A stretch of 64,000 nucleotides of DNA. Source: Octopus sinensis. Taxonomy: Eukaryota. Within the stretch, counting starts at the first letter, position 1, and each line of letters starts with the position of its first letter. The notes beneath the pieces were generated by a model. The model ran no database searches, was not told the DNA's origin, and was given only the letters and a program-made list of their open reading frames with translations. Position numbers and translations under genes: made by a program. Shown here piece by piece: positions 5,490-53,753 of this stretch. Location: positions 10,788,001-10,852,000 of the forward strand of contig NC_043009.1 in assembly GCF_006345805.1 (NCBI RefSeq), given 5' to 3'.

Positions 5490-5580
5490 TTGTATAAATG
5501 TATGGATGTATGTATGTACGTATGTAAGTATGTACGTATGTAAGTATGTATGTATATATGTATGTACGTATGTATGTATG

Positions 5581-5637
<57 letters not shown>

Positions 5638-6760
5638 GTATGTATGTGTGTATGTAAGTATGTATGTATGTAAATATGCATTTATGTATGTATGTATGCA
5701 TGTCTGTATGTATGTAAGTATGTATGTATGCATGTATGTATGTAAGTATGTAAGTATGTATGTATGTATGTAAATATGCATTTATGTATGTATGCATGTA
5801 TGTATGTATGTAAGTATGTATGTATGTATGTAAGTATGTATGTATGTAAATATGCATTTATGTATGTATGTATGTATGTATGTAAGTATGTATGTATGCA
5901 TGTATGTATGTAAGTATGTAAGTATGTATGTATGTATGTAAATATGCATTTATGTATGTATGCATGTATGTATGTATGTAAGTATGTATGTATGTATGTA
6001 TGCAAGTATGTATGTATGTAAGTATGTATGTATGTATGTATGCAAGTATGTAAGTATGTATGTATGTAAGTATGTATGTGTGCATGTATGTATGTATGTA
6101 TGAATGTATGTATGTATGTATGTATGTAAATATGCATTTATGTATGTATGTATGTATGTATGTAAGTATGTATGTATGTATGTATGTATGTATGCAAGTA
6201 TGTATGTATGTAAGTATGTATGTATGTATGCATGCAAGTATGTAAGTATGTATGTATGTAAGTATGTATGTGTGCATGTATGTATGTATGTATGTATGTA
6301 TGTATGAATGTATGTATGTATGTATGAATGTATGTATGTATGTAAGTATGCATTTATGTATGTATGCATGTATGTATGTATGTAAGTATGTATGTATGTA
6401 TGCAAGTATGTATGTATGTAAGTATGTATGTATGTATGTATGCAAGTATGTAAGTATGTATGTATGTAAGTATGTATGTGTGCATGTATGTAAGTATGTA
6501 AGTATGTATGTATATATGTATATGTATGTATGTATATGTAAGTATGTATGTATATATGTATGTATATATGTATGTATGTAAGTATGTATGTATGCATGTA
6601 TGTATGTAAGTATGTAAGTATGTATGTATGTACGTATGTAAGTCTCTATGTATATATGTATGAATTTAAGTATGTATGTATGTATGTTTGCATATATGTA
6701 TGTATATTAGTATGTATGTATATATATGTGAACTTATGTACATGTATGATTACATGCATA
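5490..6760. repeat. (TATG)n satellite array, about 1.27 kb
   Basis: Continuous TATG repeat with recurring variant AAATATGCATTTATG; source of the YIHT/YVCM ORFs. Confidence 0.97.
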
Positions 6761-8879: not shown

Positions 8880-9774
8880 TACAATAAAGTTTCTTGCTGT
8901 GGAAAGTTCAAGAGTCTTCATACCTTTCCATCTCACCCCTCTTTCTCTCATTCTCCTTATCTCACTTCCATTCTTTCTCTCTCTCTCTCTCTTTATTTAT
9001 ATGTGTGTGTGTGTGTGAGTGCCTGCAATCTATATCTATTTTAATTCCCGGTCTGAAGAATCGCTAATAAGAGATGCCTTACGTGTCATTTTATACATGT
9101 ATACCCATATAAATCGTATTAGTAACGAAACATTTGTAATGAAGAATGAATAACAACAAAAGTTTTCCAGTTCTCTATTTTGATATGTATATATAATATA
9201 ATAAATTATATAACATATATATGCATGTGTGTGCGCATGTGCGTATGCGTGTGTGTGTTTGTGTTAATGTATGGACTTACACATACATATACATATATAC
9301 ATATATAAATATATACACATAAAAGATATGTACATGTTGCCTGCTGTTTTATTTTTACTACTCTGATATTAAATTTTATGTGGCTTTCCTACAGTTACTT
9401 GACGCCTTCCAGAGCTCCATTACGGTGGGGGTATCGTCCCCGTATATGGGGTTTGTGGAATGTTAATGATTTAGGACCACTTTGATCCCTGTTGTCACCA
9501 TAAAGAACAAAGCACGAGCCCTAAGTTGAAAACAATAGGTACTTTATATTTTTGATTATACATTTTTGCATTTTAGACAGCAAAAGAAAGCTTCTCTTGT
9601 ATACTACGACATGACAGCTAACGTATTAAAGAATTTACAACATTTATGTGTTTTATTCTGAAACCAGAAATAATACTGCGTTACACATGGGCTTAACTAT
9701 TATGTGTGGCTATAGGAAATCTGGTGTAGAAAAAACAACAGAGTAGTAATCGAACGTATATATACATACGTACA

Positions 9775-10590
<816 letters not shown>

Positions 10591-10959
10591 ATCCATCCCA
10601 TTCTCTCTCTCTCTCTTTTTGCCCCGTCTCCCTCTCCCCCTCCCCCTCTCTCTCTTTATATATATCTATATATATAAGTTCTTTTATATATATATGCAAG
10701 TTCTTGCATTGATTGCATTTCCCTAACTACTGTATTCTCTGCGACGTTGTTATAAAGCCAGGTAGACGAGAAATAACAAAGCAATCGATACGCTGCAGCT
10801 TTATATGTGCATATGTATTATTGAATGCAGAGACATGGAATTATGGGATGAACAATACAATGACTATGATGCAACCTATTGCAGATAAGACGGGGGTAAT
10901 AAATCACGATAGCATAGCGGCAGAGCATTTTGATGAGAGATATCATGTGTACAGAGATT

Positions 10960-15105: not shown

Positions 15106-16896
15106 ATATATCTAATATAATAAATGCGAAAACTAATTTCTGTGTATCAGTGTGTCACACTTTGACCCCTTCTCTCACTATTCCATGTCACTTCTAGTAA
15201 TGCGCATGTTGCGGTGAAAATAATGATAGGCATAGAGACGGTGGCGGAGGGAGAGAGAGAGAGAGAGGGAGAGGGAGGGAGAGACAGAGAGAAAGTAAAA
15301 GAGAGGGAGATAAAGAGAGACAAGGTGGCAGTGGGAGTAATAAGAGAAAGAGAAAGAGTGGGTATATGAGAGAAAGAAGGACTGAATACTAAACGAACAT
15401 TTAGCCTTTTCATGATGATAATGGGGTGATAGTAATGGTTTGAGCTGTATTTGTGATAGAGGCGGAGGCGGCGGTGATAATGTTTGTGGTGGTATCCGAA
15501 GCGGTCAGGGATGAAGGTGAGAATAAGTGATGTGAAAGACAGTGGTGATGGTGGTAGAGGGGAAGGCGGCAAAGTCAAAGGTATTGATGGTGGTGGTGGT
15601 GGTGTCAAAAGTCTGAACGGTGTGTGAATGGCAGATGTGGTGACGTTGGTGCTGGTACTATTGTTTGTCAAGCAGCTTTGCAATAAATTCCTAGTCGACG
15701 AATCATATATGCAAATATCAGTGTGTCAGTGTGTCACACTTTTTAAACTTTATTCCCTCAGGCCGTTGCCCAACATATCATACCATTTTGGAATCAGGCC
15801 GACTCGATAAGTAAATTAAAAACACTCCGGGCCGAATTCGGACACGCAATCCTGAAATTTTGGATTCCCGAATTTTCATTACGGGGGTACAAAAAGTAAA
15901 GAAAAATTAAGGGGAGATAAAGAAGCAAAGGGAGGTAAATCCCCTTACTTTACTTACTTTACCAAAATGCGTTTACACCACACCAGGACTAGTTTAGTTT
16001 GGAATTGAAAATCAATTGAGATAGTTGCACCCTACTTCTATTTACGTTTTATTTATTTTCTTATAATCTAAAAAATAGGGCGAGTATGTTCTTGATATTT
16101 TTGCACCCAGGGCCGGACAACTCTGGAAAAGTTATTTAGTTGTTTTAAAGCTAATAAGTGAATATGCTTCAAGAGGAAACGGCTGCAATTTTACCGTACC
16201 TAGCTGCATTATATACATACGTACTAGACACATACACACACACACAAAAACACACACGCATACACACACACAAACTAGCACACACAAACATACACACACA
16301 TAGACAGACACACTCATATTCATGAGGAGATGACACATCGACAATATATTTCTCCATATCTCAAAAACGAAATAGTGTTGAAACTATAGAAATCATCAGA
16401 AACCAACTCTTAATGCCTTTTTCTTGCTAGTAATATTAATGAATGTAAAACGAATATGATATTTAATTTTTTTATTTAAAATATGTCTATAAATTTTTAA
16501 TTATTCGGTTATCACTTCATGATAGCTGCATTCCCCTTTTTTTTTATTTACGAAAATTCTTTCAACTTTAGCAAAAGGGGTAAGGGTGATCTTGATATTT
16601 GACACCCTGGGCCGGATAACTCTGTGTTCTGTGTTTAGCTGCTCATATATGCAGCTGGATATTCAGGTTCGTTAGAAGATCGGTGAAATCTTTTGTGCTG
16701 TATAGTTATGTCAGCTTCTCTATTCAAATCTCACAGCGGTCAAAGAGATTGGCATATCTGTAAACAAAGAAGGTAAAAGTTATATAAAACCTGGGGGTAT
16801 ACGTAACATATCGATAAACATTTTATCAGATGAAATAGTTTATTGTGTGGTTTTAAAATTAGAAAAGAAAAAACATGGAATCATGACTTACTTGAT

Positions 16897-17048
16897 CTAG
16901 CCAAGTTTTACGGACATGGTCACATGACCATTTACAGAATAAACGATGATCTGTACTACTTGATGCAAACCGGAACTGGCTTGCATGAAGATGTCGGATA
17001 CAATAAGTGGAATACAAGGTGGGACCTCTTCGGTCTGGCTACCATCAT
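16897..17048 (-). CDS. nested orphan gene, coding exon 4 (to TAG; exon continues to a donor after 16892)
   Basis: catag acceptor; phase-1 frame DDGSQTEEVPPCIPLIVSDIFMQASSGLHQVVQIIVYSVNGHVTMSVKLG*; 8 synonymous differences against the paralog exon at 28958-29113 in this frame. Confidence 0.75.
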
Positions 17049-17465
17049 CTATGTAGTAACAAATAAATAAAATGAATAAATAAATAAAGTAACAAATAAA
17101 TAAAAATTCATGTTATACCCTAAACGAAACATGGAAAAGAGATTTTGAGAAAAGTATGTATGCATGAACATATGTATCGCAACGACATTAAGTTATCAAT
17201 GCATAGATATATCCCGATCATTCACTACAAGCTGTAAGTTTGTTCTCAAATAGTACTTGGCAGTATTAAATTCATGATTGAGTCGGCCATGCTACGGTAG
17301 TCGTGTTTTCGCTCAATAAACACACACAACGCCCGGTCTGGGAATCGAAACCGCGATCCTCTATGTCTATGTACCATATTTAAATATTCAGAAAATGCAA
17401 AACAATCGAGTAGGTAGTTTATAATATATAGTAAAAAAAAATGAGAAAATGCATTAATAACTTAC

Positions 17466-17525
17466 CAAACTCTGATGGTTTGTGAAATTCTTCATCAAAG
17501 GAATCGGTGTCGGTCGAGGGTAAGT
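17466..17525 (-). CDS. nested orphan gene, coding exon 3 (60 nt, phase 1-1)
   Basis: ttttccag acceptor, G|gtaag donor; DLPSTDTDSFDEEFHKPSEF. Confidence 0.75.
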
Positions 17526-17693
17526 CTGGAAAAGAAAACAGACAATGGATAAAACTATTACTACAAACAAAAACAAAAAATACGAAAGGAAAAGATAACT
17601 CAGACTCTCTTACCCAACACACGAAAATATATATTAATGCATAACAGAGTATATTAATTTGTTAACTGAAGTTTAAGAAGGTCGAATATTTAC

Positions 17694-17741
17694 CTGGACA
17701 AGATGTTCGCTCAGACTGGTCGTAGTCAATGGGGGTAAAAT
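17694..17741 (-). CDS. nested orphan gene, coding exon 2 (48 nt, phase 1-1)
   Basis: tttcag acceptor, CAG|gtaaat donor; DFTPIDYDQSERTSCP; 5 synonymous differences against the paralog exon at 30104-30151. Confidence 0.8.
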
Positions 17742-18142
17742 CTGAAACCAACACAAATATAAATATAGAAATCGTACATGTATGTGTGAGTGAAGTTGAT
17801 GAAGTTTGAGGGCGATTTTGGTTGCTATATCTAGCAAGTGTAGCCCCGCTCAGATTTTTTACGTAGGTATATATGCATGTATGAACCGGCGATATGTTGG
17901 AAAATCTTGTTAAATAACTTGTTTAAGTTTGACTACATAGAAATCTGAATAACTTGTTTAAGTTTGACTACATAGAAATAGCAGCTTAATCTCATAAAGA
18001 GAAATAGAGAAACTGAGAGAGTGAGAGATTGATAAATACATAATCAGATAGATAGAAAAATAGGTAGATGTAGAGAGACGTTAAACAATGCAAAACTCAT
18101 TTGTTTTATGCATATATTTTAAACAATTTTAGCGAAACTCAC

Positions 18143-18371
18143 CCTCAATACGAGGAATTATAGCAGATTGATTGAGATTTCTCGGGAAATCTTCTTCTGT
18201 AGTTGTCATCAAGGAGATGTCTGATGATAACGGTGAAGAAAAATCTGTGTCATCTTCCAAAGGGTCTTCAAGTTTCGGTCGTCGTACGCAGGGTATTAAT
18301 CTTGAGAAAAAGTTTCGAGCTCCTTTACGAAGTCGTTTACGGAAGCCCGGGCGGTGTAGAACGTCGGACAT
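18143..18371 (-). CDS. nested orphan gene, coding exon 1
   Basis: ATG in an AACCAA-ATG context, candidate acceptors ahead of 18381 and 18444, GAGG|gtgagt donor in phase 1; MSDVLHRPGFRKRLRKGARNFFSRLIPCVRRPKLEDPLEDD...PRIE. Confidence 0.7.
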
Positions 18372-18523
18372 TTGGTTATATCTATTAAAACAAACAAGCT
18401 ATTAGCAAATATATTAACGCAAGTCAATGGATTGTAATAGTAACCTACAAGAAGTTAACTGTTAGCAATGGCCAAAGTATCGCAAATGAATGAGGGAAAA
18501 TATCGCGTTTTTCTGACTTCAGT

Positions 18524-18539
18524 ATTATGACGTCATAAT
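18524..18539. promoter_or_regulatory. 16-bp palindrome containing a full CRE (TGACGTCA)
   Basis: ATTATGACGTCATAAT, about 155 nt upstream of the nested gene ATG. Confidence 0.4.
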
Positions 18540-18754
18540 TGTGATTTAACTGACCAAAATTACGTTTTATATTTCAATTAATTTATTACTTAACAATAAG
18601 CAGATACAGAAAGCTAAAACACATTCAAACACAGTTACACACACAAACATACAGACGGATAGAATACAATCGTTGATGCATATATATATATATATATATA
18701 ATATATACATTCGACGTTGCGCACATAAAATTTCATACATACAAAATTTTCAGC

Positions 18755-18866
<112 letters not shown>

Positions 18867-19026
18867 CCTACCTATCTATCTATCTATCTGCTTGTGTGTG
18901 TGTAAGTCTGCGTGTGTGTGAATTTTGGGGGGTTGCTTCAGTATTATATTAACATAAACAAATTAGAATTGGAGTCAGGTGTATTTGGTTATGACATAGT
19001 TCTTCATGAATTGTATACTCGTATCT

Positions 19027-19073
<47 letters not shown>

Positions 19074-19269
19074 ACTTTAGGAAGAAATGGTTTTTGTATA
19101 AAAAAGATGAATTTGATAAGAAGAGGATATATTTCTATTTCCTTTTGGTTCAGCTACTGTCCGGATATATCGTTGGTTTATATATATTAAGATAATGTGC
19201 GATTTGAGAGATTACATTTGTTATTTCCCATCAGGTACAGCTACTATTAAGTGGAGCATATGTTTCTGC

Positions 19270-19294
19270 ATACCTACCTACATATATACATACA

Positions 19295-19325
<31 letters not shown>

Positions 19326-19488
19326 GTACATATATACATACATACACAAATACATACATACATATGTACATATATACATACATACACAAATACATACATA
19401 CACAGATACATATATATACATGCATATATACATACATACATACATACATATATACATACATACATACATATATACATACATACATACA
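19270..19488. repeat. (CATA)n microsatellite abutting an RTE-derived element
   Basis: Directly visible. Confidence 0.9.
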
Positions 19489-20020
19489 TGGTGGCTGCCC
19501 CTCGTTATCGAGTATGGCCATTGCACGAAGCTTAATTAATGTTGTTATCGTGCAATGCCTGTGCAAGAAGATTTTTTTAAAGTGAGGAAAGGCTGTGCAC
19601 TGAGTCAATCCCACTCACTAAGCAACAGCAGCCATAATGCGAAAAGAAGAACAAGTCAACATCATCGGTAACCACTGAGCCGCAGGTTTATGTCGGAGTT
19701 ATCCCAGTTACCTGAGTTACCTTCTCCTAGAAGGATGCCCTAACAAAGGCTAGGAGTCCTTCACTCCCAATGGTTTAACCGCGCGATCGGGTATTCAGTC
19801 CGATTATTTCTACGTCCCGCGCATGATATAGCCTTAAGACATTTATTGGATGGCCGTTCACTCTCAAGAGTTCCTCCGCCCTTTGACGGGTTTTGTTTTT
19901 CATCCCGCAGGGTGTCCAATAAACACCCTCCTCACCAAGCAAGCTTGGTGGGGTTGCCGGTTTCGTCGCCGACGACCCGACCATGCAACAGGTTGTACTG
20001 GGTTACATGTTACCAGTAGC
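19489..20020 (-). mobile_element. internally deleted RTE/BovB-like non-autonomous element
   Basis: The left part resembles an RTE 3' end (GCCCCTCGTTATCGAG on +); the right part resembles an RTE 5' UTR (GGAGAAGGTAACTC on -); no ORF; embedded in CATA repeats. Confidence 0.45.
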
Positions 20021-20819: not shown

Positions 20820-21332
20820 GGAGGCGCGTGGCTTAGTGGTTAGGGTGTCAGCATCATGATCGTAAGATTATGGTTTCGATTCCTGGACCGGGTGACGCGT
20901 TGCGTACTTGAGCAAAACACTTCCTTTCACGTTGCTCCAGTCCACTCAGCTGGCAAAAATGAGTAACGCTGCAATGGATTGGCGTCCCGTCCAGCTGGGG
21001 AACACATATGCTATAGAAACTTGGAAACTGGGCCCATGAGCCTGGTTAGGCTTTAAAAGGGTGCATTGTGGAGGCGCGTGGCTTAGTGGTTAGGGTGACA
21101 GCATCATGATCGTAAGATTGTGGTTTCGATTTCTGGACCGGGCGACGCGTTGTGTTCTTGAGCAAAACACTTCATTTCACGTTGCTCCAGTCCACTCAGC
21201 TGGCAAAAGTGAGTAACGCTGCGATGGACTGGCATCCCATCCAGCTGGGGAACACATATGACATAGAAACTTGGAAACCGGGCCCATGAGCCTGGTTAGG
21301 CTTTAAAAGGGCGCATTTATTTATTTATTTAT
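20820..21332 (+). mobile_element. tRNA-derived SINE family C, head-to-tail dimer (250-bp unit)
   Basis: Units start at 20820 and 21070; A box TGGCTTAGTGG, B box GGTTTCGATTCC, V-SINE-like GATGGACTGGC..CC.TCCAG segment, (TTTA)n tail on the second copy only. Confidence 0.85.
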
Positions 21333-28177: not shown

Positions 28178-28509
28178 CAGTCTACAAGTTATCGGAAAGA
28201 TCCAGTGGAATAATTAATGATAGGGCCCAGAAAGTGTGTCAATAGCCAGCTGGAGAAGATGTTCTCCTGGGGCTACAAGCTACAGTAGCATCAACCCTTA
28301 GGGGTTAGCCACATTTAAGTGGCAAGTATACTTCACATTGTCGTGTAGCTACTGTTTATACCTCGTTTAGAGATTTATAAAAATAAATAATTTGTATGTA
28401 AAATTTCAGATTTAAATATATTTTAACGATTTTAAGTGTGTCTATTTCTGAATTTGAATTAGGAGACGACACATCAAAACTGTATTTTCCTATATTCCAA
28501 AAGATAGAT

Positions 28510-29349
28510 TAGTGTTGAAATTATAGAAGCAAAAAGCAAAACAGCTCCAATGTCATTTTGCTGCTGGTAATATTAATAATGGATACAAAAGAGTAGGATT
28601 TTTAATATTTTATTAAAAATATATTCATGAATTTTCAGTCATTCGGTAACCTTTCCATGATAGTTGCAACCCCTTTTTTACTTATGAAATTTTTCTACTT
28701 TAGCAAAAAGGGCAAGGGTGTTCTTTATACTTGACACTCAGGGCCGGATAACTCTGATGGTGCTCTCTTCTACGTCGTTGGATTTTCAGGTTCGTTAGAA
28801 CGTCGGACAAATGTTTTGCGCTCTATAGTTATGCCAGCGCCTATACTCAAATCTCACAGCTAAGTTATTGGTATATCTGTAAAAAACATATTGATAAACA
28901 GACCAAATACTTTACTGTGTTGTTTTAATATAACAAAAGGATGGAATTATGGCTTACCTAATCTAGTCAAGACTTACAGACATGATCACGTGACCATTTA
29001 CAGAAAAACGATGACCTGTGTAACGTAATGCATCCCGAAACTGCCTTGCATCTAAATATAGGATACAGCAACAGGAATACGAGGTGGGTCCTCTTCCTTT
29101 TGGTTTCCATCATCTGCGGAGTAACAAATAAATAACATAAAGTAACAATTAAATAAAAATTCATGTTATGCACTAAAAGAACTATGGAAAAAATATATCG
29201 CAAAGACATTAAGTTATCAATATATAAAGCCATGAATACGGTTTTAAATACACCAGCACCATTGTCATACGGTGATGGGGGGGGGAGGACAAACAGAAAA
29301 AAGACACACACGTATGATATATACATACATACATACATTACATATACAT

Positions 29350-29389
<40 letters not shown>

Positions 29390-29717
29390 TATATAATATA
29401 GATATGTGTGTGTGGTGTGTGTGTGTGTGTGTATGTATGTATAGATACAGAACGGGTTTCTTTCAGTTTCCGCTTACCGAATTCACTCATAAGTATTGGC
29501 CGGCCGAGGCTACGGTAGAAGACACTTGCCCAAGTTGCCACACAGTGAGACTGAAACCAGAACCTTTTAACAGGGAAGCAAACTTCTTACACACCACTAT
29601 ACATGTACCTATTATATATATATATATATAGACATAATTATACATATATATATACATACGTGCATACATACGTGCATACATACATGCATACATACATACA
29701 TACACACGCGCACACAC

Positions 29718-29759
<42 letters not shown>

Positions 29760-30270
29760 GAGTGTGTGTGCGTGTGTGCGTCTATGAGTTTGTGATATTT
29801 GAATGTGAATGATATTTAAAAGATTGAACATTACTCTAGATTATAATGTTTAGTAAAATAAATTAGAAGGTGCATTAATTATAACTTTTTCAAACTATGA
29901 TGTGGCGTCAAATAACTCTTCACTCATCAGTGTGGATCGAGGATAAGTTTGCAAATAAAAAACGGACAAAATATAACAACATTACTACAAAAATCACACA
30001 AAATCTCGCAGAGACGAAGACACTCGAATATTATGGTAGACATAACTCAATATGATAACATGTCAGCTAAAAGTTTAGAAGGTCATTTATGATTATAGTT
30101 GACCTTCAGTGGAAGTTCGTTCAGACTGGTCAAAGTCACGAGGTGTAAAATCTGAAAATAACAGAAAAATAATTACATAAATCATACATGTGTGTGTGTG
30201 TGTTGGTGTCTGATGCCGTTTAGGAATGATTTGAATTTTTATATCTGTCGGCTTAGCACCGCCAAAGGTT
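28510..30270 (-). pseudogene. tandem paralog of the nested orphan gene, decayed
   Basis: Exon 2 homolog 30104-30151 intact. Exon 3 homolog 29891-29948 has lost its AG and GT and contains a TGA. Exon 4 homolog 28958-29113 has a premature TAG (29052-54) and a 1-nt deletion. Introns and the 3' region align with 16370-17870. No exon 1 homolog found. Confidence 0.8.
29447..29600 (-). mobile_element. SINE family A, 5' part
   Basis: Reverse complement of the head (GTAGAAGACACTTGCCCAAG). Confidence 0.7.
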
Positions 30271-37318: not shown

Positions 37319-39139
37319 ATATATGTAACCTTTTACTATGGAGTGAATATCATGTCTTTAAGCAGAGTATTGTATCTTTCGATACGCGTATTACCGACCA
37401 GTAAAATGTTGTTTCTAAGAGGTGTATAATGCAGAGTATTATACCATATGTTTGTAAAAATTCTTTCGTGTATATTATAGAGTTCACACATGGAATGATT
37501 TAGATTTAGTATTGCTTATGAAACATTCGTTAAAGATCAGTGAACGGCTTAGAAAAATTCTGCTTTGCAGAAAAGCCGAATTGTACGTAAACCTTATATT
37601 TACCAGAGGGTAGATTCTGCTTTTCAGATTTGTGGCAGAAACAGAATATAACCAACTGATGAAATATTCACTACTGAATCTTCAACCACTTCATCAGCAT
37701 CCATTTAGTATCTATAGTCCGTGTAAAATACATTACTATATTATTAGCAATCTCGTTTCGCTAAATACTGGCTTTGGATTCATTGTATCATATTCCTTTC
37801 AATAATGTTTTATTTTCCCTTGCATTCATTAAACAGAAGTTAGTTATGTTGGCATTAAGAATACTTTTTGATGGAAAAATATGAAGATAATGCTAATACA
37901 ACTTTTTAACTATTTCGACTGAGTAGTAGCTTAATCTAAGATTACTATCGACTTCAGATAGTCTGGAACAAACAGTAATCCTATTAGCATATGTGAAGAA
38001 GATATCGAATAAGCAAGAGTCTTAAAAATTAATACGGATAAAAATATGTTGAAACCGTTTCCTTGACTGAAAATAGTGTCAATGTAATAAAAAATTAAAA
38101 AAATAATCTGACGGTGATTTGTTAGAGCAAGAGTGGCCCCAAAGAGGTTATGCAAATACTTATATGTATTCGTATGATATTGCAGTATTAACACCCTGAA
38201 AATAGTTTACCGTATTTTCATGGTTTCTGCATCTTTGAAGCTTAATTTATTCTGCCATCAGAACTCTGTACACTTTATAACATGGTTGCTGTACAGTGTC
38301 TGTAACAGGACGGATACATTTGTCCTAACTGGAGTATGCAAAGGTATGCTGATAATAGATAGAAAGATGATTGGTATAAACATATAAATACATTCTTATG
38401 TAATATTTGTGACATGTTAGGTATGATAGATAAAATTCATAAGCAAAGACTCAGTTACTGGAAGCTAAACGTATCGCTCCAGGCGCACCAAACTTACAAA
38501 GACAAGATTATCGAATTACTTTAAGGTGGTGTTGAAGAGGGTGATCGTCAAGAAACAAATGGTAATTCGACAGAAAAAAGGTTTAGCAAGGTCAGGGCGA
38601 TAGAGATAAATAGAATAAAGGGTGTCTTATCTAGAAATGTAGAAGAGGGGCTGAAGAAAGTCATAGCAACCGTCGTGCTCGCGATGATATTGCTCCTTCA
38701 CCAATTCTTCATAGCGAAACGGGAAGGCCGCATTTTGAGAGCTAAAACATGTGATTTAAGGCACGAAAGGACGAAAACCACTCGATAGTACCGAGTAGTG
38801 AAGGTGCAAAGTGGTAACAAAAACAACAATTTAGACATTGGTGAATGTTATTCGACTTCATATAGATATATGTAGCTTTTCAACTGTTCAGGGCGAGTGG
38901 CGGGCTGGAACGCTGGATGGACTTTAGTATCTTCATCGACAACCGGCCACCCGGCCACAACTCTCTGTGAGTGAGTCGCGGTGATGTAGCGCTGCTAAGA
39001 AAGGACTCAATCAAATAGAGGCATAGCAAAAGATTGACGCAATAGTAATAAAACCAAAAACAAACACTAATAAAATGATAAAGGATTAAAAATATCCAAC
39101 ATTGTTTTAACTCATTCAGTATACTTGAATATATTTCAG

Positions 39140-39262
39140 GATGGTCAGGTGAATCATGTCAAAACAATATTGACGACTGCGTGGGAAACGGTTGCAAGTT
39201 CGGTTCAACATGTGAAGATAAACTCGGATTTTATACCTGTACCTGCCCAGCAGGTATAACAG
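39140..39262 (+). CDS. DSL-EGF gene, exon B (end of DSL plus EGF1)
   Basis: tttcag acceptor, ACAG|gtatgt donor, phase 1-1; (G)WSGESCQNNIDDCVGNGCKFGSTCEDKLGFYTCTCPAGIT(G). Confidence 0.92.
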
Positions 39263-39300
39263 GTATGTTGATTTTATTAAAAGAAATAATATTTTTATTA

Positions 39301-39721
39301 CTCTTTACTCTTTTTACTCTTTTTACTTGTTTCAGTCATTTGACTGCGGCCATGCTGGAGCACCGCCTTTAGTCGAGCAACTCGACCCCGGGACTTATTC
39401 TTTGTAAGCCCAGTACTTATTCTATCGGTCTCTTTTGCCGAACCACTAAGTTACGGGGACGTAAACACACCAGCATCGGTTGTCAAGCAATGCTAGGGGG
39501 ACAAACACAGACACACAAACATATATACACACATACATATATATATATATATACATATATACGACAGTCTTCGTTCAGTTTCCGTCTACCAAATCCACTC
39601 ACAAGGCTTTGGTCGGCCCGAGGCTATAGTAGAAGACACTTGCCCAAGATGCCACGCAGTGGGACTGAACCCAGAACCATGTGGTTGGTTAGCAAGCTAC
39701 TTACCACACAGCTACCCCTGC
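39301..39721 (-). mobile_element. SINE family A, full length
   Basis: Reverse complement of 3223-3630; lies about 40 bp after the exon B donor. Confidence 0.85.
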
Positions 39722-46793: not shown

Positions 46794-47172
46794 GGCATAG
46801 TTACTGCTTACTAAATCACTAATTCACTACGTTTAGGTGAGCAGGGCCTGAGGCTGGAGTGGAAAACAGTAGTCCATGATGCCGTACAATGGAAATGAAT
46901 CCGAATCGATGTGTTACCGGAAGAAACGTTTAAGCCCCACAGCATCACCAACAGATTCTGTTATGCCTTAGCATTCGCTTTCTTTTTATTGATACGACCT
47001 GCATATTGAGCATTCAAACTTTCTGAGCATTTGGCAATAGTGGACCATCATCGTTATTTCGGGTTCCTTACGATACGATTTCTGCCACGTTTTCACACCT
47101 TCATATAAATTCTTCAATGTAACGTATTGATAATGTGCTATAATAACTTCACCCTAACACATGTCTTTTCAG

Positions 47173-47342
47173 GTCGCTACTGTGAAGCAGAAATTAACGA
47201 ATGTGCATGGTTCCATTGTCTCAACGGAGGTAGATGTCAGGATGGTCGCGCGTCCTTTTTATGTATCTGTCCTGCAAAATATACAGGGTCTCGGTGTGAA
47301 CGAGAAATCAATGCTTGTGACAGTTCTCCTTGTTTAAATCAG
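47173..47342 (+). CDS. DSL-EGF gene, exon C (EGF2 and start of EGF3)
   Basis: ttttcag acceptor, CAG|gttggt donor, phase 1-0; RYCEAEINECAWFHCLNGGRCQDGRASFLCICPAKYTGSRCEREINACDSSPCLNQ. Confidence 0.92.
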
Positions 47343-47754
47343 GTTGGTGATGCATATCAATTTCATATTCCTGAATGCAGCGCAACGCATACAGTTAAAT
47401 TGGATCTTAGTAGCATATACGAAGGGAATTCACTACATCTGGGCAAATGATTAGTGATCCTTAATTCAGGCTTCGTAGGTTTGTTGTAATGCATATGAGA
47501 GATTTCTATACACACAAATAACTAACTGGATTAACACCATCCTTCTAATGGTATTGCGCAATATTTTATCAACAAGTAATGGCTGTGAGGATTAACAAAT
47601 TTGGGTGAATAAATTGTCATGCTTTATATTCCTATGATGTTTCGAACTTTTTGATCAGGCGCTATACCATACCATGGCGAGAAAAGAAAAGATATATAGA
47701 TACAATAAGATATATCGATATTAATTCAATAAGAGTAAGGAAGATGGAGCAGAT

Positions 47755-47759
<5 letters not shown>

Positions 47760-47792
<33 letters not shown>

Positions 47793-47830
47793 TGTATGTA
47801 TTGTATGTATGTATGTATGTATGTATGTAC

Positions 47831-47869
<39 letters not shown>

Positions 47870-47906
47870 ATATTTATATATATATATATGTATGTATATA
47901 TATATG

Positions 47907-47944
<38 letters not shown>

Positions 47945-48310
47945 TGTATGTATATATATATGTATATATATATATGTATGTATATATATGTATATATATA
48001 TGTATGTATATATATGTATATATATGTATATATATATGTATATATATATATATATATATTCTAATACATTGTTATTAATATCAGGAAATCAATATTAGAG
48101 AATTCTTCAGAAAGATATATACCTATGTAAAATAATTGTTGTATTAAATATATAAATATATATAAATATATGTAAAAATGTATAAGTATAAATATGTAAT
48201 ATATATGACAGTACAATATGATGGATTTTATGCATAATTATTATGGATATATGTATGTATGTATATATATGCATGTATATATATATATATATATATATAT
48301 ATGTAAATAT
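47760..48310. repeat. (TATG)n/(TA)n arrays
   Basis: Directly visible; interrupted by AT-rich spacer sequence. Confidence 0.85.
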
Positions 48311-48896: not shown

Positions 48897-51800
48897 AATA
48901 TTTTAAGTATAGGAAAGAATGGAGCTGAGCGAAGATTTAACAAAATTCCTTTATTTTATTTTCGACATAAACTTAGATAAACTTAGATATGTTTCGACCA
49001 AAGATTGGTCCAGGCCATGTCTAACTTAATAGCACCACCTGATAGGATTATTCGAATCCTGTTTAAGTCAAGTTTTGTTTAAATCAAGTTTTGTTTAAAT
49101 CAAGTTTTGTTCAAGTAGTGAGTTCTTGTTGGGTGAGTTGTATCCAATTATGGGTGGCTTATCTGGTATTCTTTGAAGGAATCTATCCAGACTCTGTTTA
49201 AAGTTGATGGGATCCTTCTCCTCTTTGATCTCCCTCGGGACAATGTTAAATAGGGCAGGGCCTGTTGAGGAAAAGAAATTATGTTGCAGTGTACATGTAT
49301 GTTGTGATCTTGAATTGGGCAGGGGGCGTATAGCCCGTGGTCCAAGTCTTGGATGAACCTTGAAGCTAATGTTTAGGTCGTTTGGGCAAAGTTGGCGGTA
49401 TATTTTCCACATCGTACAAATGATGTACCGCTCACGGCGACGCTGGAGGGAGTAAAGTTTCAAGGCTTTAAGGCGATCCCAATAATCGAGAGCAGCCATG
49501 CCTTCAATTTGTTTAGTGAGTGCCCTCTGGGGTGACTCAATTCTGGAGATGTTTTGTCTTGTGTGAGGAGACCACAGTGGGCAGCAGTATTCAAGGTTTG
49601 GCCGTACAAAGGAGGAAAAAAGTGGTATGATGACACCTTGTTCTCTGGACCTGAAAGTTCTTAAGATCCAGGAACTCATCCTACGAGCTATATCGACCTT
49701 CTTGTTGATGTGTGCACTCCAACTGAGATCGTCATCAACAATTACACCCAGGTCTCTGATATTGTTAGAGGCTGTGAGCGGTTCCCCTGAAGGAAGAGAG
49801 TATGGTTGTTTTAGTGAGGAATTTCTTCCAAAATGCATCAGCTCAAATTTTCCCTCATTCAGTTGCATTTTGTTTCTGTCTGCCCATTGACTCACAGCAT
49901 ATAGATCAGACTGGAGTTGAGTTCGGTCTGCTTCTTCATTGACGACTTGCTGAAGCTTAGTGTCATCATCAAATATTTTCACTTTGCAGTAATGTACGAC
50001 ACTGGAAAGGTCGTTTACGTAAATTATGAAGAGTAGCGGACCCAAAACAGTTCCCTGGGGAACACCGCTGGTGACTTTTGCTGGGTTTGAGTGGACTCCA
50101 TCAACTACAACATGTTGTGTTCTATTCGCCAGGAAATACTTAATCCAGTGTAGAACTTTTCCACGGATTCCAACATTTGCCAATTTTGAGAGTAGGATGT
50201 TATGGTCTACCCTGTCGAACGCTTTACTGAAGTCAAGATATATGACATCAGAGTTCGAACCTGTTCCCAAGGCTTTGAGTACATCTTCAATGTGGTGTAA
50301 GAGCTGTGTTAGACAGTCCCTGCCACAGCAAAGCCATGCTGATTTGCATTTAGGAGTTTTTGGGGTCTCCAGGAAGTCAGCTATCCTTGATCTTAACACT
50401 CTTTCAAACATTTTAATGATGTGGGAGGTAAGTGAGATTGGGCGATAGTTGACTGCGAGGGATCTGTTTCCCTGTTTGAAAACCGGGATGACCGACTGGG
50501 ATAGAAACTGTTTCGGTATATAACCTGCGTCTAACGAATTTCTCCAGAGGTTGGTCAGAGGGACTGCAAGTTGGTATCTACATTCCTTCAGGAGACTAGC
50601 GGGAAATCTATCAGGGCCTACAGCAGAGTAATGTTTGACCTCATTTATTGCTGCTACGATGTCGGTGGCAGTGAAGGTTATGTCTGAGATTTGTGTGTTG
50701 GAGTCAACTTCGTTCGTTTCCCTTACGTCAATATCAGTGGGAACACTAAAGACAGAGCGGTATTGTTTCTGCAGTATTTCTGCCATTTCTTTAGCATCGT
50801 GTTGGGGAATGCCGTTATCATCAATCAATGGCCCAATGGGTGAGACAGTGGTTCTATGCTTATTGCATAAGAATAGAACACTTTTGGGTTCTGTTTGATG
50901 TTTTTGATTACCCATTGTTCCTCTACAGCTCTTTGATTTTCAATGGAGGTTTTCATGTTGTCTGCTGCAGATGAAGTTTTTCCAGCTCTAGTCTTTTCAT
51001 TGTTGTTGAATGTGGATGTTGTGTGTGGGAATATTTTAATTGGTTGATTTTTTTGTTGAGTCTTTTGATGCGCCTGATGAGTGTTTTTTTTCTTTTTAGG
51101 GAGCCGGTTTCTGTTTGTGTTAGTAGATTTCTTGGGAGCGTGTTTAGAGCATGTATAGGTGACGATGTTTTCAAAGTGCTGCCACGCGGTCTCAATATGA
51201 GAGGAATTGAGAGTAAAAGACCAGTCTATGGAAGACAGATCCTTTCTGATTGTTCCCCAGTCCGCTTTGTGGAAGTTTATGTTGTCAAATGGGTGCCATG
51301 GAGTGGGATTGGCTGGTTTGGTTTTTATATGTCGGGAATTAAGATTGCAGTGTACCATGTCGTGGTCTGAGAGGAGAGTTTTTTCGACTGAAATACTGTG
51401 AACGTAGCTAGAGTGATTGGTCAATACCAGATCCAAGATCGTTTTATTCTGTCTCGTTGGTTCAAGCACTAGCTGAGTCAGGAAATACTCATCCATCAGA
51501 TTAAAGAGAAGTTCTGCTGCTGCTCTATCTGATGTAGAGCACTTGCCTAACTTCAGAGTATTTGTGGGCCAGTTCACATGAGGGAGGTTAAAATCACCCA
51601 TCACTAGTATGTTTCCGGAGTGGTACTTCCGAAGGAAGGACTTGACTTTGCTAAGGCACTCTTCAAAGTACTTTAGAGGTGCCTGGGGAGGCCTGTAAAG
51701 ACCAACAATGGTTATGTCCTTGGCTTTGTTGTATAGTGATACCGATTCACAGTAGCCATTGGAAAATATGTCCTTGGCATCAAGTGAAAAGGAGTCATGG

Positions 51801-52810
51801 ATAAAGATGGCTGTCCCTCCCTTATTTCGGTCTGTGCGATCCGCACGAACAATGGTGAAATCTTTTATTTTCACCTCTGCGTCCATATGGGTGTTGTTCA
51901 GGTGAGTCTCGGTAAGGATAAAGAAAGGGAAGCAATGTGCCATTTCGGCAAGCCAACTCTCTATATATGGGATCTTCCATTTTTGGGCAATAATTGATGG
52001 GTTGATGCCACGTACATTTAACAGGAATGTCGAGTTAAGGGAAGTTGGTAATGGGTGAGTGGTCCTTGTGATTTGCATAGATGGTTGGTGATAGCTCTCT
52101 GGATCTCCTGGCTTAGGTCGGCCTTCATATTTTCTAGGTATGTCAGTAATAAAGAGTTACTTGTTTGGTTTGCCACTTGATCAGAGGATACATATTTCAT
52201 GTTGGCGTTATTTGGTGTTTTTTCATGGTTCTGTCTACGTTGTTTGATTGTAGGAGGGGAAACATGGTTGTATTTTGTTCTTGTTGTTGTCCTAGATTTC
52301 CTCTGTTCCTGTTTATATTTATTCTGTGATCGTTTTGTGCCCTTCAGTTGGTTGTGATTGCATTCTGGATTCAGGCACATCCTTTGTGAAACAGAAGTTT
52401 GGCACAGTTTAGGATGGAATAAGGTGCGTCCATTGCCTTTTATGCATCCGTATTTAGGATCAAAACCATGGATTCTGTGTATGTTTCGAAGTCTGCAAAA
52501 TTCCTAATTCCGAATGAATAAGGAGTCCATATGCAGCTTTCTCGTCATATGGACTCCTTATTCATTCGGAATTAGGAATTTTGCAGACTTCGAAACATAT
52601 GTCGAAAATAAAATAAAGGAATTTTGTTAAATCTTCGCTCAGCTCCATTCTTTCCTATACTTAAAATATTAAATTAAGCTTCAAATTTCCGCACTAAGGA
52701 ACGGAGTATATGCCCTATGGTCGTAACTTCAACCGTGTTCTTTCTGTTGTGAGTTTGCTACCAGGTATCGGTTATCTTTCGAATTATCCGTAATAAGATA
52801 ATTATTTATC
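48897..52810 (-). mobile_element. hammerhead-bearing Penelope-LTR-like element with an internal inversion (palindrome), split by a LINE
   Basis: 48897-48968 plus 52480-52533 is the reverse complement of 52546-52670; 52671-52810 is homologous (minus strand) to 61420-61540. Confidence 0.7.
48970..52479 (-). mobile_element. CR1/L2-group LINE, 5'-truncated (partial ORF1, APE endonuclease, RT, 3' UTR)
   Basis: EN motifs LLNVRG, LTETHL, GDFNLP, SDHD; RT motifs YRPISLTS, DFSKAFDRV, GVPQGTVLGP, FDDDT, LYSLQRRRERY; Cys/His ORF1 remnant FHPKLC..C..C; 3 x 16-bp repeat at 49062-49109; (AAACTTAGAT)2 tail. Confidence 0.95.
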
Positions 52811-53105
52811 TACTTAAATATATATACATATATTATACATACGCATATAATATGTATGTATATATATTATATAGATAGATATATGTACGTATATATGTAT
52901 ATATATGTATAAGTAAATATATATATGTTTATATATATAGATATATAATATATATGTATATATATGTATAAGTAAATTATATATGTTTATATATATATAA
53001 TATATATGTATATATATATACATACACATATATATATATGTATAATATATATAGATAGATATATGTACGTATATATGTATTATATGTATAAGTAAATATA
53101 TATAT

Positions 53106-53146
<41 letters not shown>

Positions 53147-53584
53147 TATATGTATAAGTAAATAATATATATGTATATATATGTATAAGTAAATATATAT
53201 ATGTTTATATATATATATTATATATGTATATATATGTATAAGTAAATATATATATGTTTATATATATATATATATGTATATATATGTATAAGTAAATATA
53301 TATAGTTTATATATATATATTATATATAATATATAATATATATATTCTTATATATATATATATGTATATATATATAATATAATATATATATATGTATATA
53401 TAATATATTATATATATAATAGTATATATATATATATATTATATATATATGTATATAATATAATATATATGTATATTATTATATATATATATATATGTAT
53501 GTATATATATATATATATATGTATACATATATATATATATATATATATGTATACATATATGTATACATATATATATATATATGT

Positions 53585-53676
<92 letters not shown>

Positions 53677-53696
53677 GTATATTATATATATATGTA

Positions 53697-53753
<57 letters not shown>

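What the first reader, a model, noticed from the sequence alone, without database searches (positions are those of the whole stretch)
16897..18371. Unrecognised 162-aa gene nested antisense in the DSL-gene intron
Seen: four exons with canonical splice sites, all phase 1, give MSDVLHRPGFRKRLRKGARNFFSRLIPCVRRPK (basic, amphipathic, one Cys), then an acidic S/T/D/E-rich linker, then a hydrophobic beta-like C-terminus CIPLIVSDIFMQASSGLHQVVQIIVYSVNGHVTMSVKLG. Comparison with the paralog shows 13 synonymous third-position changes in this frame over exons 2 and 4 and a shared stop position, the signature of past coding constraint. I recognise no homolog. Inference: a lineage-restricted gene family; the N-terminus could be a membrane-binding/palmitoylated or targeting motif.
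Basis: partly seen in the sequence, partly recalled or inferred. Interest (0 to 1): 0.72.

Follow-up and report, generated by a model that had tools for sequence, protein, structure and literature searches.

The report
Octopus-only small gene inside Notch-ligand intron
The four-exon gene is real: it belongs to a fast-evolving family of small, mostly disordered proteins so far found only in octopuses, it is already in databases as "uncharacterized" (truncated at this locus), and its function is unknown.

Summary
Minus-strand exons 18371-18143, 17741-17694, 17525-17466 and 17048-16897 have GT/AG sites, are all phase 1, and give 162 aa.

The window is 100% identical to Octopus sinensis CM016871.1. 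RefSeq calls this locus LOC118765758, but only as a 111-aa product (exon 1 + exon 3 + read-through). The O. bimaculoides orthologue (LOC106880393, 163 aa) has the same four exons and is also nested antisense in a DSL/EGF gene.

- **Coding evidence:** five copies in three species keep the ORF, the splice sites and only in-frame indels.
- **Selection:** dN/dS is 0.14-0.22 in the basic N-terminus, 0.3-0.5 in the C-terminus and 0.6-0.9 in the acidic linker. Exons are no better conserved than introns.
- **Family range:** profile searches find only Octopus relatives (at least three subfamilies, several chromosomes), with no Pfam, PDB or fold match.
- **Structure:** AlphaFold predicts a cationic amphipathic helix (10-28, followed by an invariant Pro-Cys), a disordered linker and a three-stranded sheet with an invariant Asn-Gly turn.
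- **Promoter:** about 200 nt upstream are better conserved than the CDS and carry an invariant TGACGTCA (CRE) site.
- **Window paralogue (28.9-30.2 kb):** a pseudogene.

Expression and function were not tested. Interest is moderate to low.

The parts
18143..18371 (-). Coding exon 1 (229 nt, ends in phase 1). It starts at the ATG at 18371. It encodes the cationic amphipathic helix, the invariant Pro-Cys, the start of the acidic linker and the family motif NLNQSA.
   Evidence: Searches give the coordinates, and the donor is G|GTGAGT. An in-frame TAG lies 30 nt upstream of the ATG (read from the sequence). dN/dS of codons 1-34 is 0.14-0.22 across species, p = 0.002-0.02. M1-F10 and the motif RLRKGAR..FFSRL..CV are invariant in 8 family proteins.
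17694..17741 (-). Coding exon 2 (48 nt, phase 1 at both ends). It is a linker mini-exon and is skipped in the RefSeq and O. vulgaris gene models.
   Evidence: The same 48-nt exon is present in O. bimaculoides (two copies) and in the second O. sinensis copy.
17466..17525 (-). Coding exon 3 (60 nt, phase 1 at both ends). It is a linker mini-exon. The RefSeq model reads through its donor site to a stop at 17419-17421.
   Evidence: Isoform X2 of O. bimaculoides LOC106880409 skips this exon.
16897..17048 (-). Coding exon 4 (152 nt including the TAG stop at 16897-16899). It encodes the conserved C-terminal module, predicted as three beta-strands with an invariant Asn-Gly turn.
   Evidence: dN/dS in the sense frame is 0.29-0.55, against 0.43-1.97 in the codon-aligned antisense frame.
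18372..18580 (-). Conserved upstream block, either promoter or 5' UTR. It holds a palindromic CRE TGACGTCA at 18528-18535 (-164), TTGTAGGTT at 18442-18450 (-79) and an AT-rich TATA-like stretch TTAATATATTTGCTAAT at 18401-18417 (-46 to -30).
   Evidence: In the alignment of five copies, positions -125 to -1 show 119/125 identity in every cross-species pair, including paralogues whose introns are only 61-78% identical. The CRE, TTGTAG and CTAAT blocks are still invariant in subfamilies with 24-45% protein identity. No stable RNA fold is predicted, z = -0.23. No Rfam match falls here.
16322..16896 (-). Conserved 3' flank, probably the 3' UTR. An AATAAA signal lies at 16839-16844, which is 53 nt after the stop.
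   Evidence: The flank is 71% identical to the window paralogue and 90% identical to O. bimaculoides. The AATAAA at about +50 is shared with the O. vulgaris and O. bimaculoides orthologues, but not with the B paralogues. Use of this signal for polyadenylation is inferred.
28963..30151 (-). Tandem pseudogene copy in the same intron. The exon-4-like part is about 28963-29113, a remnant of exon 3 is about 29887-29949, and the exon-2-like part is about 30104-30151. There is no exon 1.
   Evidence: Exon 4 carries an in-frame TAG and a 1-bp deletion. Exon 3 has lost its AG and GT sites, has a 2-bp deletion and contains a stop.

Best explanation
**What it is.** This is a genuine protein-coding gene of a multi-copy family that current databases hold only for octopuses. 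It sits antisense in a long intron of a Notch-ligand-type (DSL/EGF) gene, and the same arrangement is found in O. bimaculoides.

**The protein has three parts.**
- Residues 1-33 form a strongly cationic amphipathic helix, followed by an invariant Pro-Cys.
- The middle is a roughly 90-residue acidic, Ser/Thr-rich disordered linker. It is built from short, symmetrical phase-1 mini-exons that can be skipped or multiplied without breaking the frame.
- The last roughly 40 residues form a three-stranded amphipathic beta-sheet with an invariant Asn-Gly turn.

**Proposed mechanism (inferred, about 25% likely).**
- The protein is cytoplasmic, with no signal peptide and no membrane span.
- The helix, plus an S-acylated Cys28, holds it on a membrane or on an acidic partner.
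- The beta module pairs with itself or docks on a partner by adding strands to its sheet.
- The acidic linker, which has 9 CK2-type sites, sets the reach and is tuned by phosphorylation and exon skipping.
- Transcription is driven from a conserved proximal promoter with a full CRE, so expression is predicted to respond to cAMP/Ca2+ signalling.

**Evolution.** Within a species, exons 1 and 4 are homogenised between paralogues by gene conversion, while the linker evolves almost freely.

**Shown versus inferred.** Shown here: gene structure, conservation, selection pattern, family range, predicted secondary structure and promoter conservation. Inferred: expression, localisation, lipidation, oligomerisation and CREB control.

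**Confidence.** About 0.85 that it is a real coding gene of an octopus-restricted family. The 0.4 given applies to the whole statement including the mechanism.
For: **Gene model and orthologue**
- The model reproduces and the window is 100% identical to O. sinensis CM016871.1.
- The O. bimaculoides orthologue P0001 is 163 aa, 71% identical over the full length, with exons of 232/48/60/152 nt. It is nested antisense in a 1056-aa DSL/EGF gene.

**Coding constraint**
- Five intact copies are kept in three species.
- dN/dS is 0.46-0.62 overall, 0.14-0.22 in the N-terminus, 0.6-0.9 in the linker and 0.3-0.5 in the C-terminus.
- Substitutions in the N-terminus are biased to third codon positions, for example 1/3/6 and 1/3/9.
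- The chance of no stop under neutrality is 0.05-0.13 per pair.

**Family**
- An HMM scan of 1.84 billion representative proteins gave 7 hits. A second profile search gave 15. All are Octopus or unnamed read-assembly contigs.
- Distant members (24-45% identity) keep GF.xRLRxGA...PC, N[LR]N[QE]SA and P.xP[LI][IV].D[IF]...NG[HN][VI]. They also keep the layout of a first exon, phase-1 mini-exons and a last exon.

**Structure**
- AlphaFold with 15 sequences predicts a helix at 10-28 (pLDDT about 82), strands at 126-136, 141-152 and 155-162 (pLDDT 75-85), and a linker below 50.
- The helix has a hydrophobic moment of 0.57-0.65 in six members.
- There is no membrane span.

**Promoter**
- Upstream conservation and the invariant CRE are shown.

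**Gene conversion**
- Exons 1 and 4 are 97% and 91% identical between O. sinensis paralogues, against 87% and 86% between orthologues. Introns show the reverse, 61-68% against 86-93%.
Against: **No transcript evidence was available**
- The exact 162-aa product, and five other splice or read-through variants, are absent from the 15-billion-protein collection.
- The read-assembly contigs that carry relatives look genomic, because they read through exon ends.
- Gene models for O. sinensis and O. vulgaris disagree with the four-exon model.

**Weak or odd conservation**
- Between orthologues, exons are not better conserved than the introns and 3' flank. All exons are 84% identical against 88% for non-coding DNA (odds ratio 1.4, p = 0.03). 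Exons 2 + 3 are 78% (p = 0.003).
- Linker dN/dS is not different from 1.
- The four O. sinensis-O. vulgaris differences are all non-synonymous.
- The antisense frame of exon 4 is also open in every copy.

**Limits on the mechanism**
- The structure model has low overall confidence (pTM 0.36), and no significant fold match was found.
- The mechanism rests on sequence features only.
- The CRE could equally be a site for another bZIP factor. TTGTAG|G could be a splice acceptor, which would put the true promoter elsewhere.
Confidence: 0.4

Rival explanations
1. The gene and family are the same, but the N-terminal cationic amphipathic helix is an organelle-targeting signal rather than a membrane anchor. 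It would be either a mitochondrial presequence or a nuclear/nucleolar signal (RKRLRK, RRPK).
For: - The first 33 residues have net charges of +4 to +10, are almost free of acidic residues in subfamily 1, and are amphipathic.
- There is no signal peptide or membrane span.
- The pairing of a basic N-terminus with an acidic tail is common in nuclear proteins (general knowledge).
Against: - Subfamily 2 has Glu inside the helix (RILEAI), and the Pro-Cys is invariant. A cleaved presequence would not need that.
- A charge of +10 is higher than in usual presequences.
- No predictor of targeting was available here.
Confidence: 0.2
2. The helix and the C-terminal sheet pack together into one small alpha/beta domain, with the linker as a long loop. 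The basic face of that domain would bind nucleic acid or another polyanion, with a dsRBD-like topology.
For: - Only these two segments are conserved, and they are conserved together.
- Both gain confidence with a deeper alignment.
- Several of the best Foldseek hits are dsRBD-type folds: Loquacious dsRBD1, ILF3 DRBM2, R2D2, RNase III and DGCR8.
Against: - All those hits have E-values of 0.8-3 and probability below 0.4, over about 40 aligned columns.
- A three-stranded meander is a very common motif.
- The second helix of a dsRBD is missing.
- Contacts between the helix and the sheet could not be inspected.
Confidence: 0.1
3. The ORF is not a functional protein-coding gene. It would be a decaying ORF or a non-coding antisense transcript unit in the DSL gene, and what is actually conserved is the promoter or transcript.
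For: - Exons evolve as fast as the introns or faster.
- Linker dN/dS is about 1.
- All four O. sinensis-O. vulgaris changes are non-synonymous.
- Annotated products are truncated or inconsistent.
- A dead copy lies 12 kb away.
- The upstream block is the best-conserved part.
Against: - The ORF, the splice sites and in-frame indels are kept in five copies.
- dN/dS is significantly below 1 in the N-terminus, while its synonymous rate is normal (dS 0.27-0.41).
- The same two protein modules survive at 24% overall identity on other chromosomes, and the exon phases are kept.
Confidence: 0.1
4. The protein is a precursor of a cationic host-defence (antimicrobial-type) peptide. The N-terminal helix would be the active peptide and the acidic region a neutralising pro-piece.
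For: - The protein has a cationic amphipathic helix of about 20 residues next to a strongly anionic region.
- It evolves fast, has many copies and undergoes gene conversion, as many immune effectors do.
Against: - There is no signal peptide.
- The part under the strongest purifying selection is the helix itself.
- A conserved folded C-terminal module is not expected in a pro-piece.
- The order (active peptide first) is unusual. That last point is from general knowledge, not tested.
Confidence: 0.05
5. Exon 4 is really the antisense image of a plus-strand coding exon (ORF 16843-17070), or the repeated block is part of a transposon.
For: - The codon-aligned plus-strand frame is open in all five copies.
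- The block around exon 4 occurs several times in related loci.
Against: - The plus-strand frame has higher dN/dS in every pair, 0.43-1.97.
- Neither reading has a Pfam hit.
- The extra copies belong to tandem gene copies that carry their own exons 1-3.
- The window's true transposon, a LINE at 49.1-52.1 kb, is unrelated.
Confidence: 0.02

Closest known systems
Octopus 'uncharacterized protein' set: O. bimaculoides LOC106880393 (XP, 163 aa), LOC106880409, LOC106879479, LOC106883218, LOC106872864; O. sinensis LOC118765758, LOC118765860, LOC118761728; O. vulgaris CAI9741596 and CAI9726543
   Same: - These are true homologues, with E-values from 1e-66 down to 1e-5.
- They share the N-terminal motif, the NLNQSA motif, the C-terminal module, the phase-1 exon layout and the conserved upstream block.
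- LOC118765758 is this very locus.
   Different: - The RefSeq product at this locus is 111 aa (exon 1 + exon 3 + read-through), not 162 aa.
- None of these proteins has a name, a Pfam family, a solved structure or a paper.
Taxonomically restricted ('orphan') genes nested in host-gene introns
   Same: - The protein is small, mostly disordered, fast-evolving and multi-copy.
- It has no relatives outside a narrow clade.
- It lies antisense in a long intron.
   Different: - It is older and better structured than a typical de novo ORF, with at least three subfamilies on several chromosomes.
- It has two modules under purifying selection.
- It has a promoter-proximal block that is more conserved than the CDS.
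Peripheral membrane proteins anchored by a cationic amphipathic helix plus a palmitoylated Cys (for example the N-termini of RGS4/RGS16; from general knowledge)
   Same: It has a basic amphipathic helix followed by a conserved Cys next to basic and hydrophobic residues.
   Different: There is no sequence homology and no RGS or other known domain. Lipidation was not tested.
Bearded-family proteins of insects (small Neuralized antagonists in Notch signalling; from general knowledge)
   Same: Both are small proteins with an N-terminal basic amphipathic helix and short conserved motifs. This gene also happens to lie inside a Notch-ligand-type gene.
   Different: - There is no Pfam or sequence match.
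- The Asn motif here is N-x-N-x-S-A, not the N-x-x-N Neuralized-binding motif recalled for that family.
- The paralogues are not in DSL genes.
CRE-plus-TATA promoters of cAMP-inducible CREB target genes (general knowledge)
   Same: A full palindromic TGACGTCA lies about 165 nt before the ATG, with an AT-rich TATA-like stretch about 40 nt before the ATG. Both are conserved across subfamilies.
   Different: The transcription start is unknown. Factor binding and inducibility were not tested.

Membership tests
Octopus LOC106880393-like family (unnamed) | N-terminal motif M-[ST]-x5-7-GF-x2-RL[RH]-x-[GR][AT]...P-C, followed by basic residues | tested here: met
   The window protein aligns column for column with 8-15 family members.
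Octopus LOC106880393-like family (unnamed) | C-terminal module P-x-[IEP]-P-[LI]-[IV]-x-D-[IF]-[FY]...[IVF][VF][YF]-x-x-[ND]-G-[HN]-[VI]-x-[ML]-[SN]-[VI] | tested here: met
   The profile E-value of the orthologue is 9e-100.
Octopus LOC106880393-like family (unnamed) | Gene layout: a first exon ending in phase 1, then 48-63-nt phase-1/1 mini-exons, then a last exon of 152-179 nt | tested here: met
   Window exons are 229/48/60/152 nt. L001 has 232/48/60/152 and L002 has 229/48/60/158. L011 has 232/63/60/152 and L012 has 199/48/48/63/63/179.
Octopus LOC106880393-like family (unnamed) | Conserved upstream block with TGACGTCA, TTGTAG and CTAAT | tested here: met
Any curated protein family (Pfam-A), including transposon proteins | A profile match at or near the gathering score | tested here: not met
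   The model has no families at E <= 1. Fifteen family members scanned at E <= 5 gave only three single-member chance hits. The PDB sequence profile search found nothing at E <= 10.
Bearded family (insect Neuralized antagonists) | Basic amphipathic N-terminal helix | tested here: met
   Hydrophobic moment 0.64, net charge +10. This is a resemblance only.
Bearded family (insect Neuralized antagonists) | Neuralized-binding N-x-x-N motif (NxANE[KR]L) and the other family motifs, or sequence homology | tested here: not met
   The family motif here is N[LR]N[QE]SA. There is no Pfam match. The motif definition is recalled from memory.
S-acylated amphipathic-helix membrane anchors | Cys next to a cationic amphipathic helix, and actual lipid attachment | not testable with these tools
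   The sequence requirement is present: Pro-Cys is invariant. The modification needs an experiment.
Mitochondrial presequence | A 15-50-residue cationic amphipathic helix without acidic residues, cleaved on import | tested here: inconclusive
   The helix is amphipathic and basic. However, subfamily 2 has Glu in the helix and the Pro-Cys is conserved. Cleavage and import are not testable here.
dsRBD-like alpha-beta-beta-beta fold | A significant structural match that includes both helices | tested here: not met
   The best Foldseek E-value is 0.76 with probability <= 0.38. No second helix is predicted.
CREB/ATF target promoter | Full CRE palindrome within about 200 nt of the start, conserved among relatives | tested here: met
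   TGACGTCA lies at 18528-18535. It is invariant in 6 of 7 sequences and reads TGACATCA in the seventh. Binding and inducibility were not tested.

The most novel reading that the evidence does not exclude
The family is an octopus-specific set of activity-induced (CRE-driven, cAMP/Ca2+-responsive) immediate-early genes. Their small helix-plus-sheet proteins would act at membranes of neurons or other excitable or secretory cells, making them a lineage-specific addition to signalling or plasticity pathways. A more remote version is that the copy nested in the DSL gene modulates Notch-ligand traffic, in the way insect Bearded proteins do.
Probability: 0.08. Interest if true: 0.75.

Novelty: new member of a known kind. 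Interest (0 to 1): 0.36.

Why it matters
**Practical value**
- It corrects an annotation. The O. sinensis locus LOC118765758, and its O. vulgaris and LOC118765860 counterparts, most likely encode 161-162-aa four-exon proteins, not the truncated or chimeric products on record.
- It defines a family with clear sequence, gene-structure and promoter signatures that could be made into a profile.

**Biological value**
- It is a tidy example of how a lineage-restricted gene family evolves. Two short modules are under purifying selection.
- They are joined by a nearly neutral linker made of frame-neutral mini-exons.
- Gene conversion is confined to the module-coding exons.
- The proximal promoter is more constrained than the protein.

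If the CRE proves functional, the family would give octopus neurobiology a set of clade-specific inducible genes to study. Without expression data, none of this goes beyond a well-described orphan family.

Tried and rejected
- **Plus-strand reading of exon 4 (ORF 16843-17070).** It is open in all copies but is less constrained than the sense frame and has no Pfam hit, so it was rejected.
- **Transposon origin.** There is no Pfam hit. The repeated blocks are tandem gene copies.
- **Relatives outside Octopus.** A full HMM scan of 1.84 billion representatives and a profile search of 5.8 billion clusters found none.
- **Solved structures.** The sequence profile search found nothing. Foldseek on two models gave nothing below E = 0.7.
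- **Transcript evidence.** An exact look-up of the 162-aa product and five variants found nothing. The Logan contigs that carry relatives are genomic read-throughs.
- **Literature.** No paper mentions the LOC identifiers. Of two octopus single-cell atlas papers, the supplements of one (PMC9712504) held none of the identifiers, and none are held as text for the other (PMC9815951).
- **RNA family or structure in the conserved upstream block.** Rfam gave only microsatellite artefacts elsewhere, and the fold z-score was -0.23.
- **Transmembrane segment or tail anchor.** The maximum hydropathy is 1.15 in this protein. Subfamily 2 reaches 1.79 at its C-terminus, but the invariant Asn-Gly in the middle favours a hairpin.
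- **PKA site RRPT.** It occurs in O. bimaculoides but is not conserved (RRPK here), so it was dropped.
- **PxIxIT-type and RVxF-type docking motifs.** Checked by eye; neither fits.
Full report
**1. The observation**

On the minus strand, the ATG at 18371 opens an 80-codon ORF. Its first 229 nt end at a G|GTGAGT donor site. Three further exons follow: 17741-17694, 17525-17466 and 17048-16897. All have AG acceptors and GT donors, and all junctions are phase 1.

The protein has three regions:
- The N-terminal 33 residues have a net charge of +10 and one Cys.
- Residues 34-121 have a net charge of -22 and are 62% S/T/P/D/E.
- The tail is beta-like and not hydrophobic enough for a membrane span.

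**2. Where the window comes from, and what is annotated**

A search with the 162-aa model returned only Octopus proteins. Fetching their loci showed that window 16000-19000 is 100% identical to O. sinensis CM016871.1. By arithmetic on those coordinates, the window is about 10,788,001-10,852,000 of that record.

- RefSeq has a gene here, LOC118765758, but its 111-aa product is exon 1 + exon 3 + read-through into intron 3. The tail GKLLMHFLIFFYYIL is the window's own intron sequence.
- The exact 162-aa product is not in the protein collection.
- The O. bimaculoides orthologue LOC106880393 (P0001, 163 aa, 71% identical over the full length) has four exons of 232/48/60/152 nt.

So "unrecognised" is true only of the full-length model in this species.

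**3. Context**

- Plus-strand exons of the host gene were confirmed with Pfam: a DSL domain at 1466-1699, and EGF repeats at 39082-39369, 47109-47447 and 56816-58867. A further EGF-like exon at 55608-55847 was recognised by its cysteine pattern only.
- The gene call that spans the O. sinensis locus on the opposite strand is 1054 aa with DSL and EGF domains. The same holds in O. bimaculoides, at 1056 aa.
- The small gene is therefore nested antisense in the long interval after the DSL exon, and this nesting is conserved between species.
- Other family members are not inside DSL genes, so nesting is not a family property.

**4. Is it coding?**

Five copies were reconstructed: the window copy, its O. 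vulgaris orthologue, O. bimaculoides A and B, and a second O. sinensis copy 1.3 Mb away. All keep an intact 161-164-aa ORF, all splice sites, identical lengths for exons 2 and 3 (48 and 60 nt), and only indels that are multiples of three.

dN/dS (Nei-Gojobori method) across species:

| Region | dN/dS | Note |
|---|---|---|
| Whole CDS | 0.46-0.62 | |
| Codons 1-34 | 0.14-0.22 | p = 0.002-0.02; dS normal; third-position bias |
| Linker | 0.6-0.9 | not different from 1 |
| C-terminal 40 codons | 0.3-0.5 | |

Simulated neutral substitution leaves the ORF open in only 5-13% of trials per pair.

The strongest argument comes from depth. Subfamilies with only 24-45% identity, on other chromosomes, keep three things:
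- the same N-terminal and C-terminal modules;
- an N[LR]N[QE]SA motif at the end of exon 1;
- the same gene layout, namely a first exon, two to four phase-1/1 mini-exons of 48-63 nt, and a last exon.

**5. Caveats on constraint**

- Between the O. sinensis and O. bimaculoides orthologues, the exons are not better conserved than the introns. Exons 1-4 are 86, 79, 77 and 86% identical, against 86-93% for introns and the 3' flank.
- Pooled exons diverge 1.4-fold more than the non-coding DNA (p = 0.03), and exons 2 + 3 diverge 2.2-fold more (p = 0.003).
- The four O. sinensis-O. vulgaris differences are all non-synonymous.
- Part of this is explained by mosaic evolution. Exons 1 and 4 are more alike between paralogues within a species (97% and 91%) than between orthologues (87% and 86%). 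Introns show the opposite. That is the pattern of gene conversion limited to the module-coding exons.
- Exons 2-3 of the window copy are the outliers of the whole set, at 65-79% to every other copy.

**6.

The block 16322-17138 matches 28458-29191 at 71%, and 17415-17792 matches 29837-30202 at 67%. The count of 13 synonymous codons is exact, but 21 codons differ non-synonymously.

That copy has a premature TAG and a 1-bp deletion in exon 4, a destroyed exon 3 and no exon 1. It is a pseudogene, and the flanking DNA is as similar as the exon. Alone it says little.

**7. The antisense ORF**

The codon-aligned plus-strand frame across exon 4 (ORF 16843-17070) is open in every copy. Its dN/dS is higher than the sense frame in all six pairs, 0.43-1.97 against 0.29-0.55. 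It has no Pfam match. I treat it as a by-product of the sense frame.

**8. Structure and sequence features**

- With a 15-sequence alignment, AlphaFold gives a helix at 10-28 (pLDDT about 82), a disordered 29-120 (below 50), and strands at 126-136, 141-152 and 155-162 (pLDDT 75-85). The pTM is 0.36. A shallower alignment gave the same topology at lower confidence.
- The invariant Asn-Gly sits exactly at the predicted turn between strands 2 and 3.
- The helix has its hydrophobic residues (F10, L14, A18, F21, F22, L25, I26, V29) on one face. The hydrophobic moment is 0.57-0.65 in six members, within the top 0.3-5% of shuffles.
- Pro-Cys right after the helix is invariant in the family.
- Foldseek against the PDB gave nothing significant. 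Several weak hits are dsRBD-type folds (E = 0.8-3), which I record only as a lead.
- There is no Pfam family and no PDB sequence match.

**9. An unexpected finding: the upstream block**

The 125 nt before the ATG are 119/125 identical in every cross-species pair, including paralogues whose introns are only 61-78% identical. Conservation continues to about -205.

Three blocks survive even in the distant subfamilies:
- a full palindromic CRE, TGACGTCA (18528-18535, -164), which reads TGACATCA in one member;
- TTGTAGGTT (-79);
- an AT-rich TTAATATATTTGCTAAT (-46 to -30).

Other observations on this region:
- An in-frame TAG lies 30 nt upstream of the ATG, so the block is not coding in this frame.
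- No stable RNA fold is predicted, and there is no Rfam match.
- The simplest reading is a conserved proximal promoter or 5' UTR with a bZIP (CREB/ATF-type) site. The alternative is that TTGTAG|G is a splice acceptor for an upstream non-coding exon.
- An AATAAA lies 53 nt after the stop and is shared with the O. vulgaris and O. bimaculoides orthologues.

**10. How it most likely works**

Shown here:
- a small protein with no signal peptide and no membrane span;
- two short conserved modules, joined by a nearly neutral acidic linker made of frame-neutral mini-exons;
- existing gene models that skip some of those mini-exons (isoform X2 of LOC106880409; the O. sinensis and O. vulgaris models).

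Inferred, at about 25%:
- The cationic amphipathic helix, plus an acylated Cys28, binds membranes or an acidic partner.
- The amphipathic three-stranded sheet self-associates or docks by strand addition.
- The linker, with nine CK2-type sites, sets the spacing and is regulated.
- Transcription responds to cAMP/Ca2+ through the CRE.

Rivals: an organelle-targeting N-terminus; a single helix-on-sheet domain that binds polyanions; a non-functional ORF; a host-defence peptide precursor.

**11. Comparison with what is known, and verdict**

The gene is a member of an unnamed, uncharacterised family that present databases hold only for Octopus. It is not a member of any curated family.

It resembles Bearded-family proteins only in having a basic N-terminal helix, and it lacks their motifs. 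It is best filed as a well-supported taxonomically restricted gene, already present in databases and mis-modelled at this locus.

Three features are worth noting: the promoter is more conserved than the protein, gene conversion is exon-limited, and the linker is modular.

No expression evidence could be obtained, and no literature mentions the family.

Interest is moderate to low.

Noticed in passing
window 18372-18580 (-): The roughly 200 nt upstream of the ATG are more conserved than the CDS or introns. They contain an invariant palindromic CRE (TGACGTCA, 18528-18535) that persists in subfamilies with only 24% protein identity.
   Followed up: yes
window 28963-30151 (-): A tandem pseudogene copy of the small gene lies in the same DSL-gene intron. 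It has no exon 1, exon 3 is destroyed, and exon 4 carries a stop and a frameshift.
   Followed up: yes
window 49095-52078 (-): A non-LTR (LINE-type) retrotransposon with two long overlapping ORFs. One is an endonuclease (Exo_endo_phos_2, E = 2e-14) and the other a reverse transcriptase (RVT_1, E = 1e-24). It coincides with the G+C rise at 48-52 kb.
   Followed up: partly
window 56816-58867 (+): The host DSL/EGF gene ends in a 684-codon open stretch. It starts with an EGF repeat and continues as a long Ser/Thr/Asn-rich region with many N-x-S/T sequons and no further domain match, which is unusual for a Delta/Jagged-type ligand.
   Followed up: no
L001 10001-10232 and 11278-11445 (O. bimaculoides): Exon 1 of the orthologue occurs twice, 1.3 kb apart. 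The first 56 codons are identical, and the first copy sits next to a run of N. This is possibly an assembly artefact rather than a real duplication.
   Followed up: partly
L004 61-250 and L002 1540-1774 / 2938-2992: Further partial copies of family exons lie within 10 kb of the paralogues. One exon 4 is 99% identical to the window's, so the family forms local tandem clusters on this chromosome.
   Followed up: partly
window 17246-17377 (-), about 17303-17358: A short stretch inside intron 3 (GGATCGCGGTTTCGATTCCCAGACCGGGCG...) looks like the 3' half of a tRNA-derived SINE. It has a weak match at 21116-21170. It was not examined.
   Followed up: no
window 5500-6750, 9750-10600, 18755-18890, 19260-19490, 47750-48060, 52860-53840: Large microsatellite and minisatellite arrays (GATA, TG/CA and ATAC-type units). 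They produce spurious Cys-rich ORFs and sub-threshold Rfam miRNA hits.
   Followed up: no
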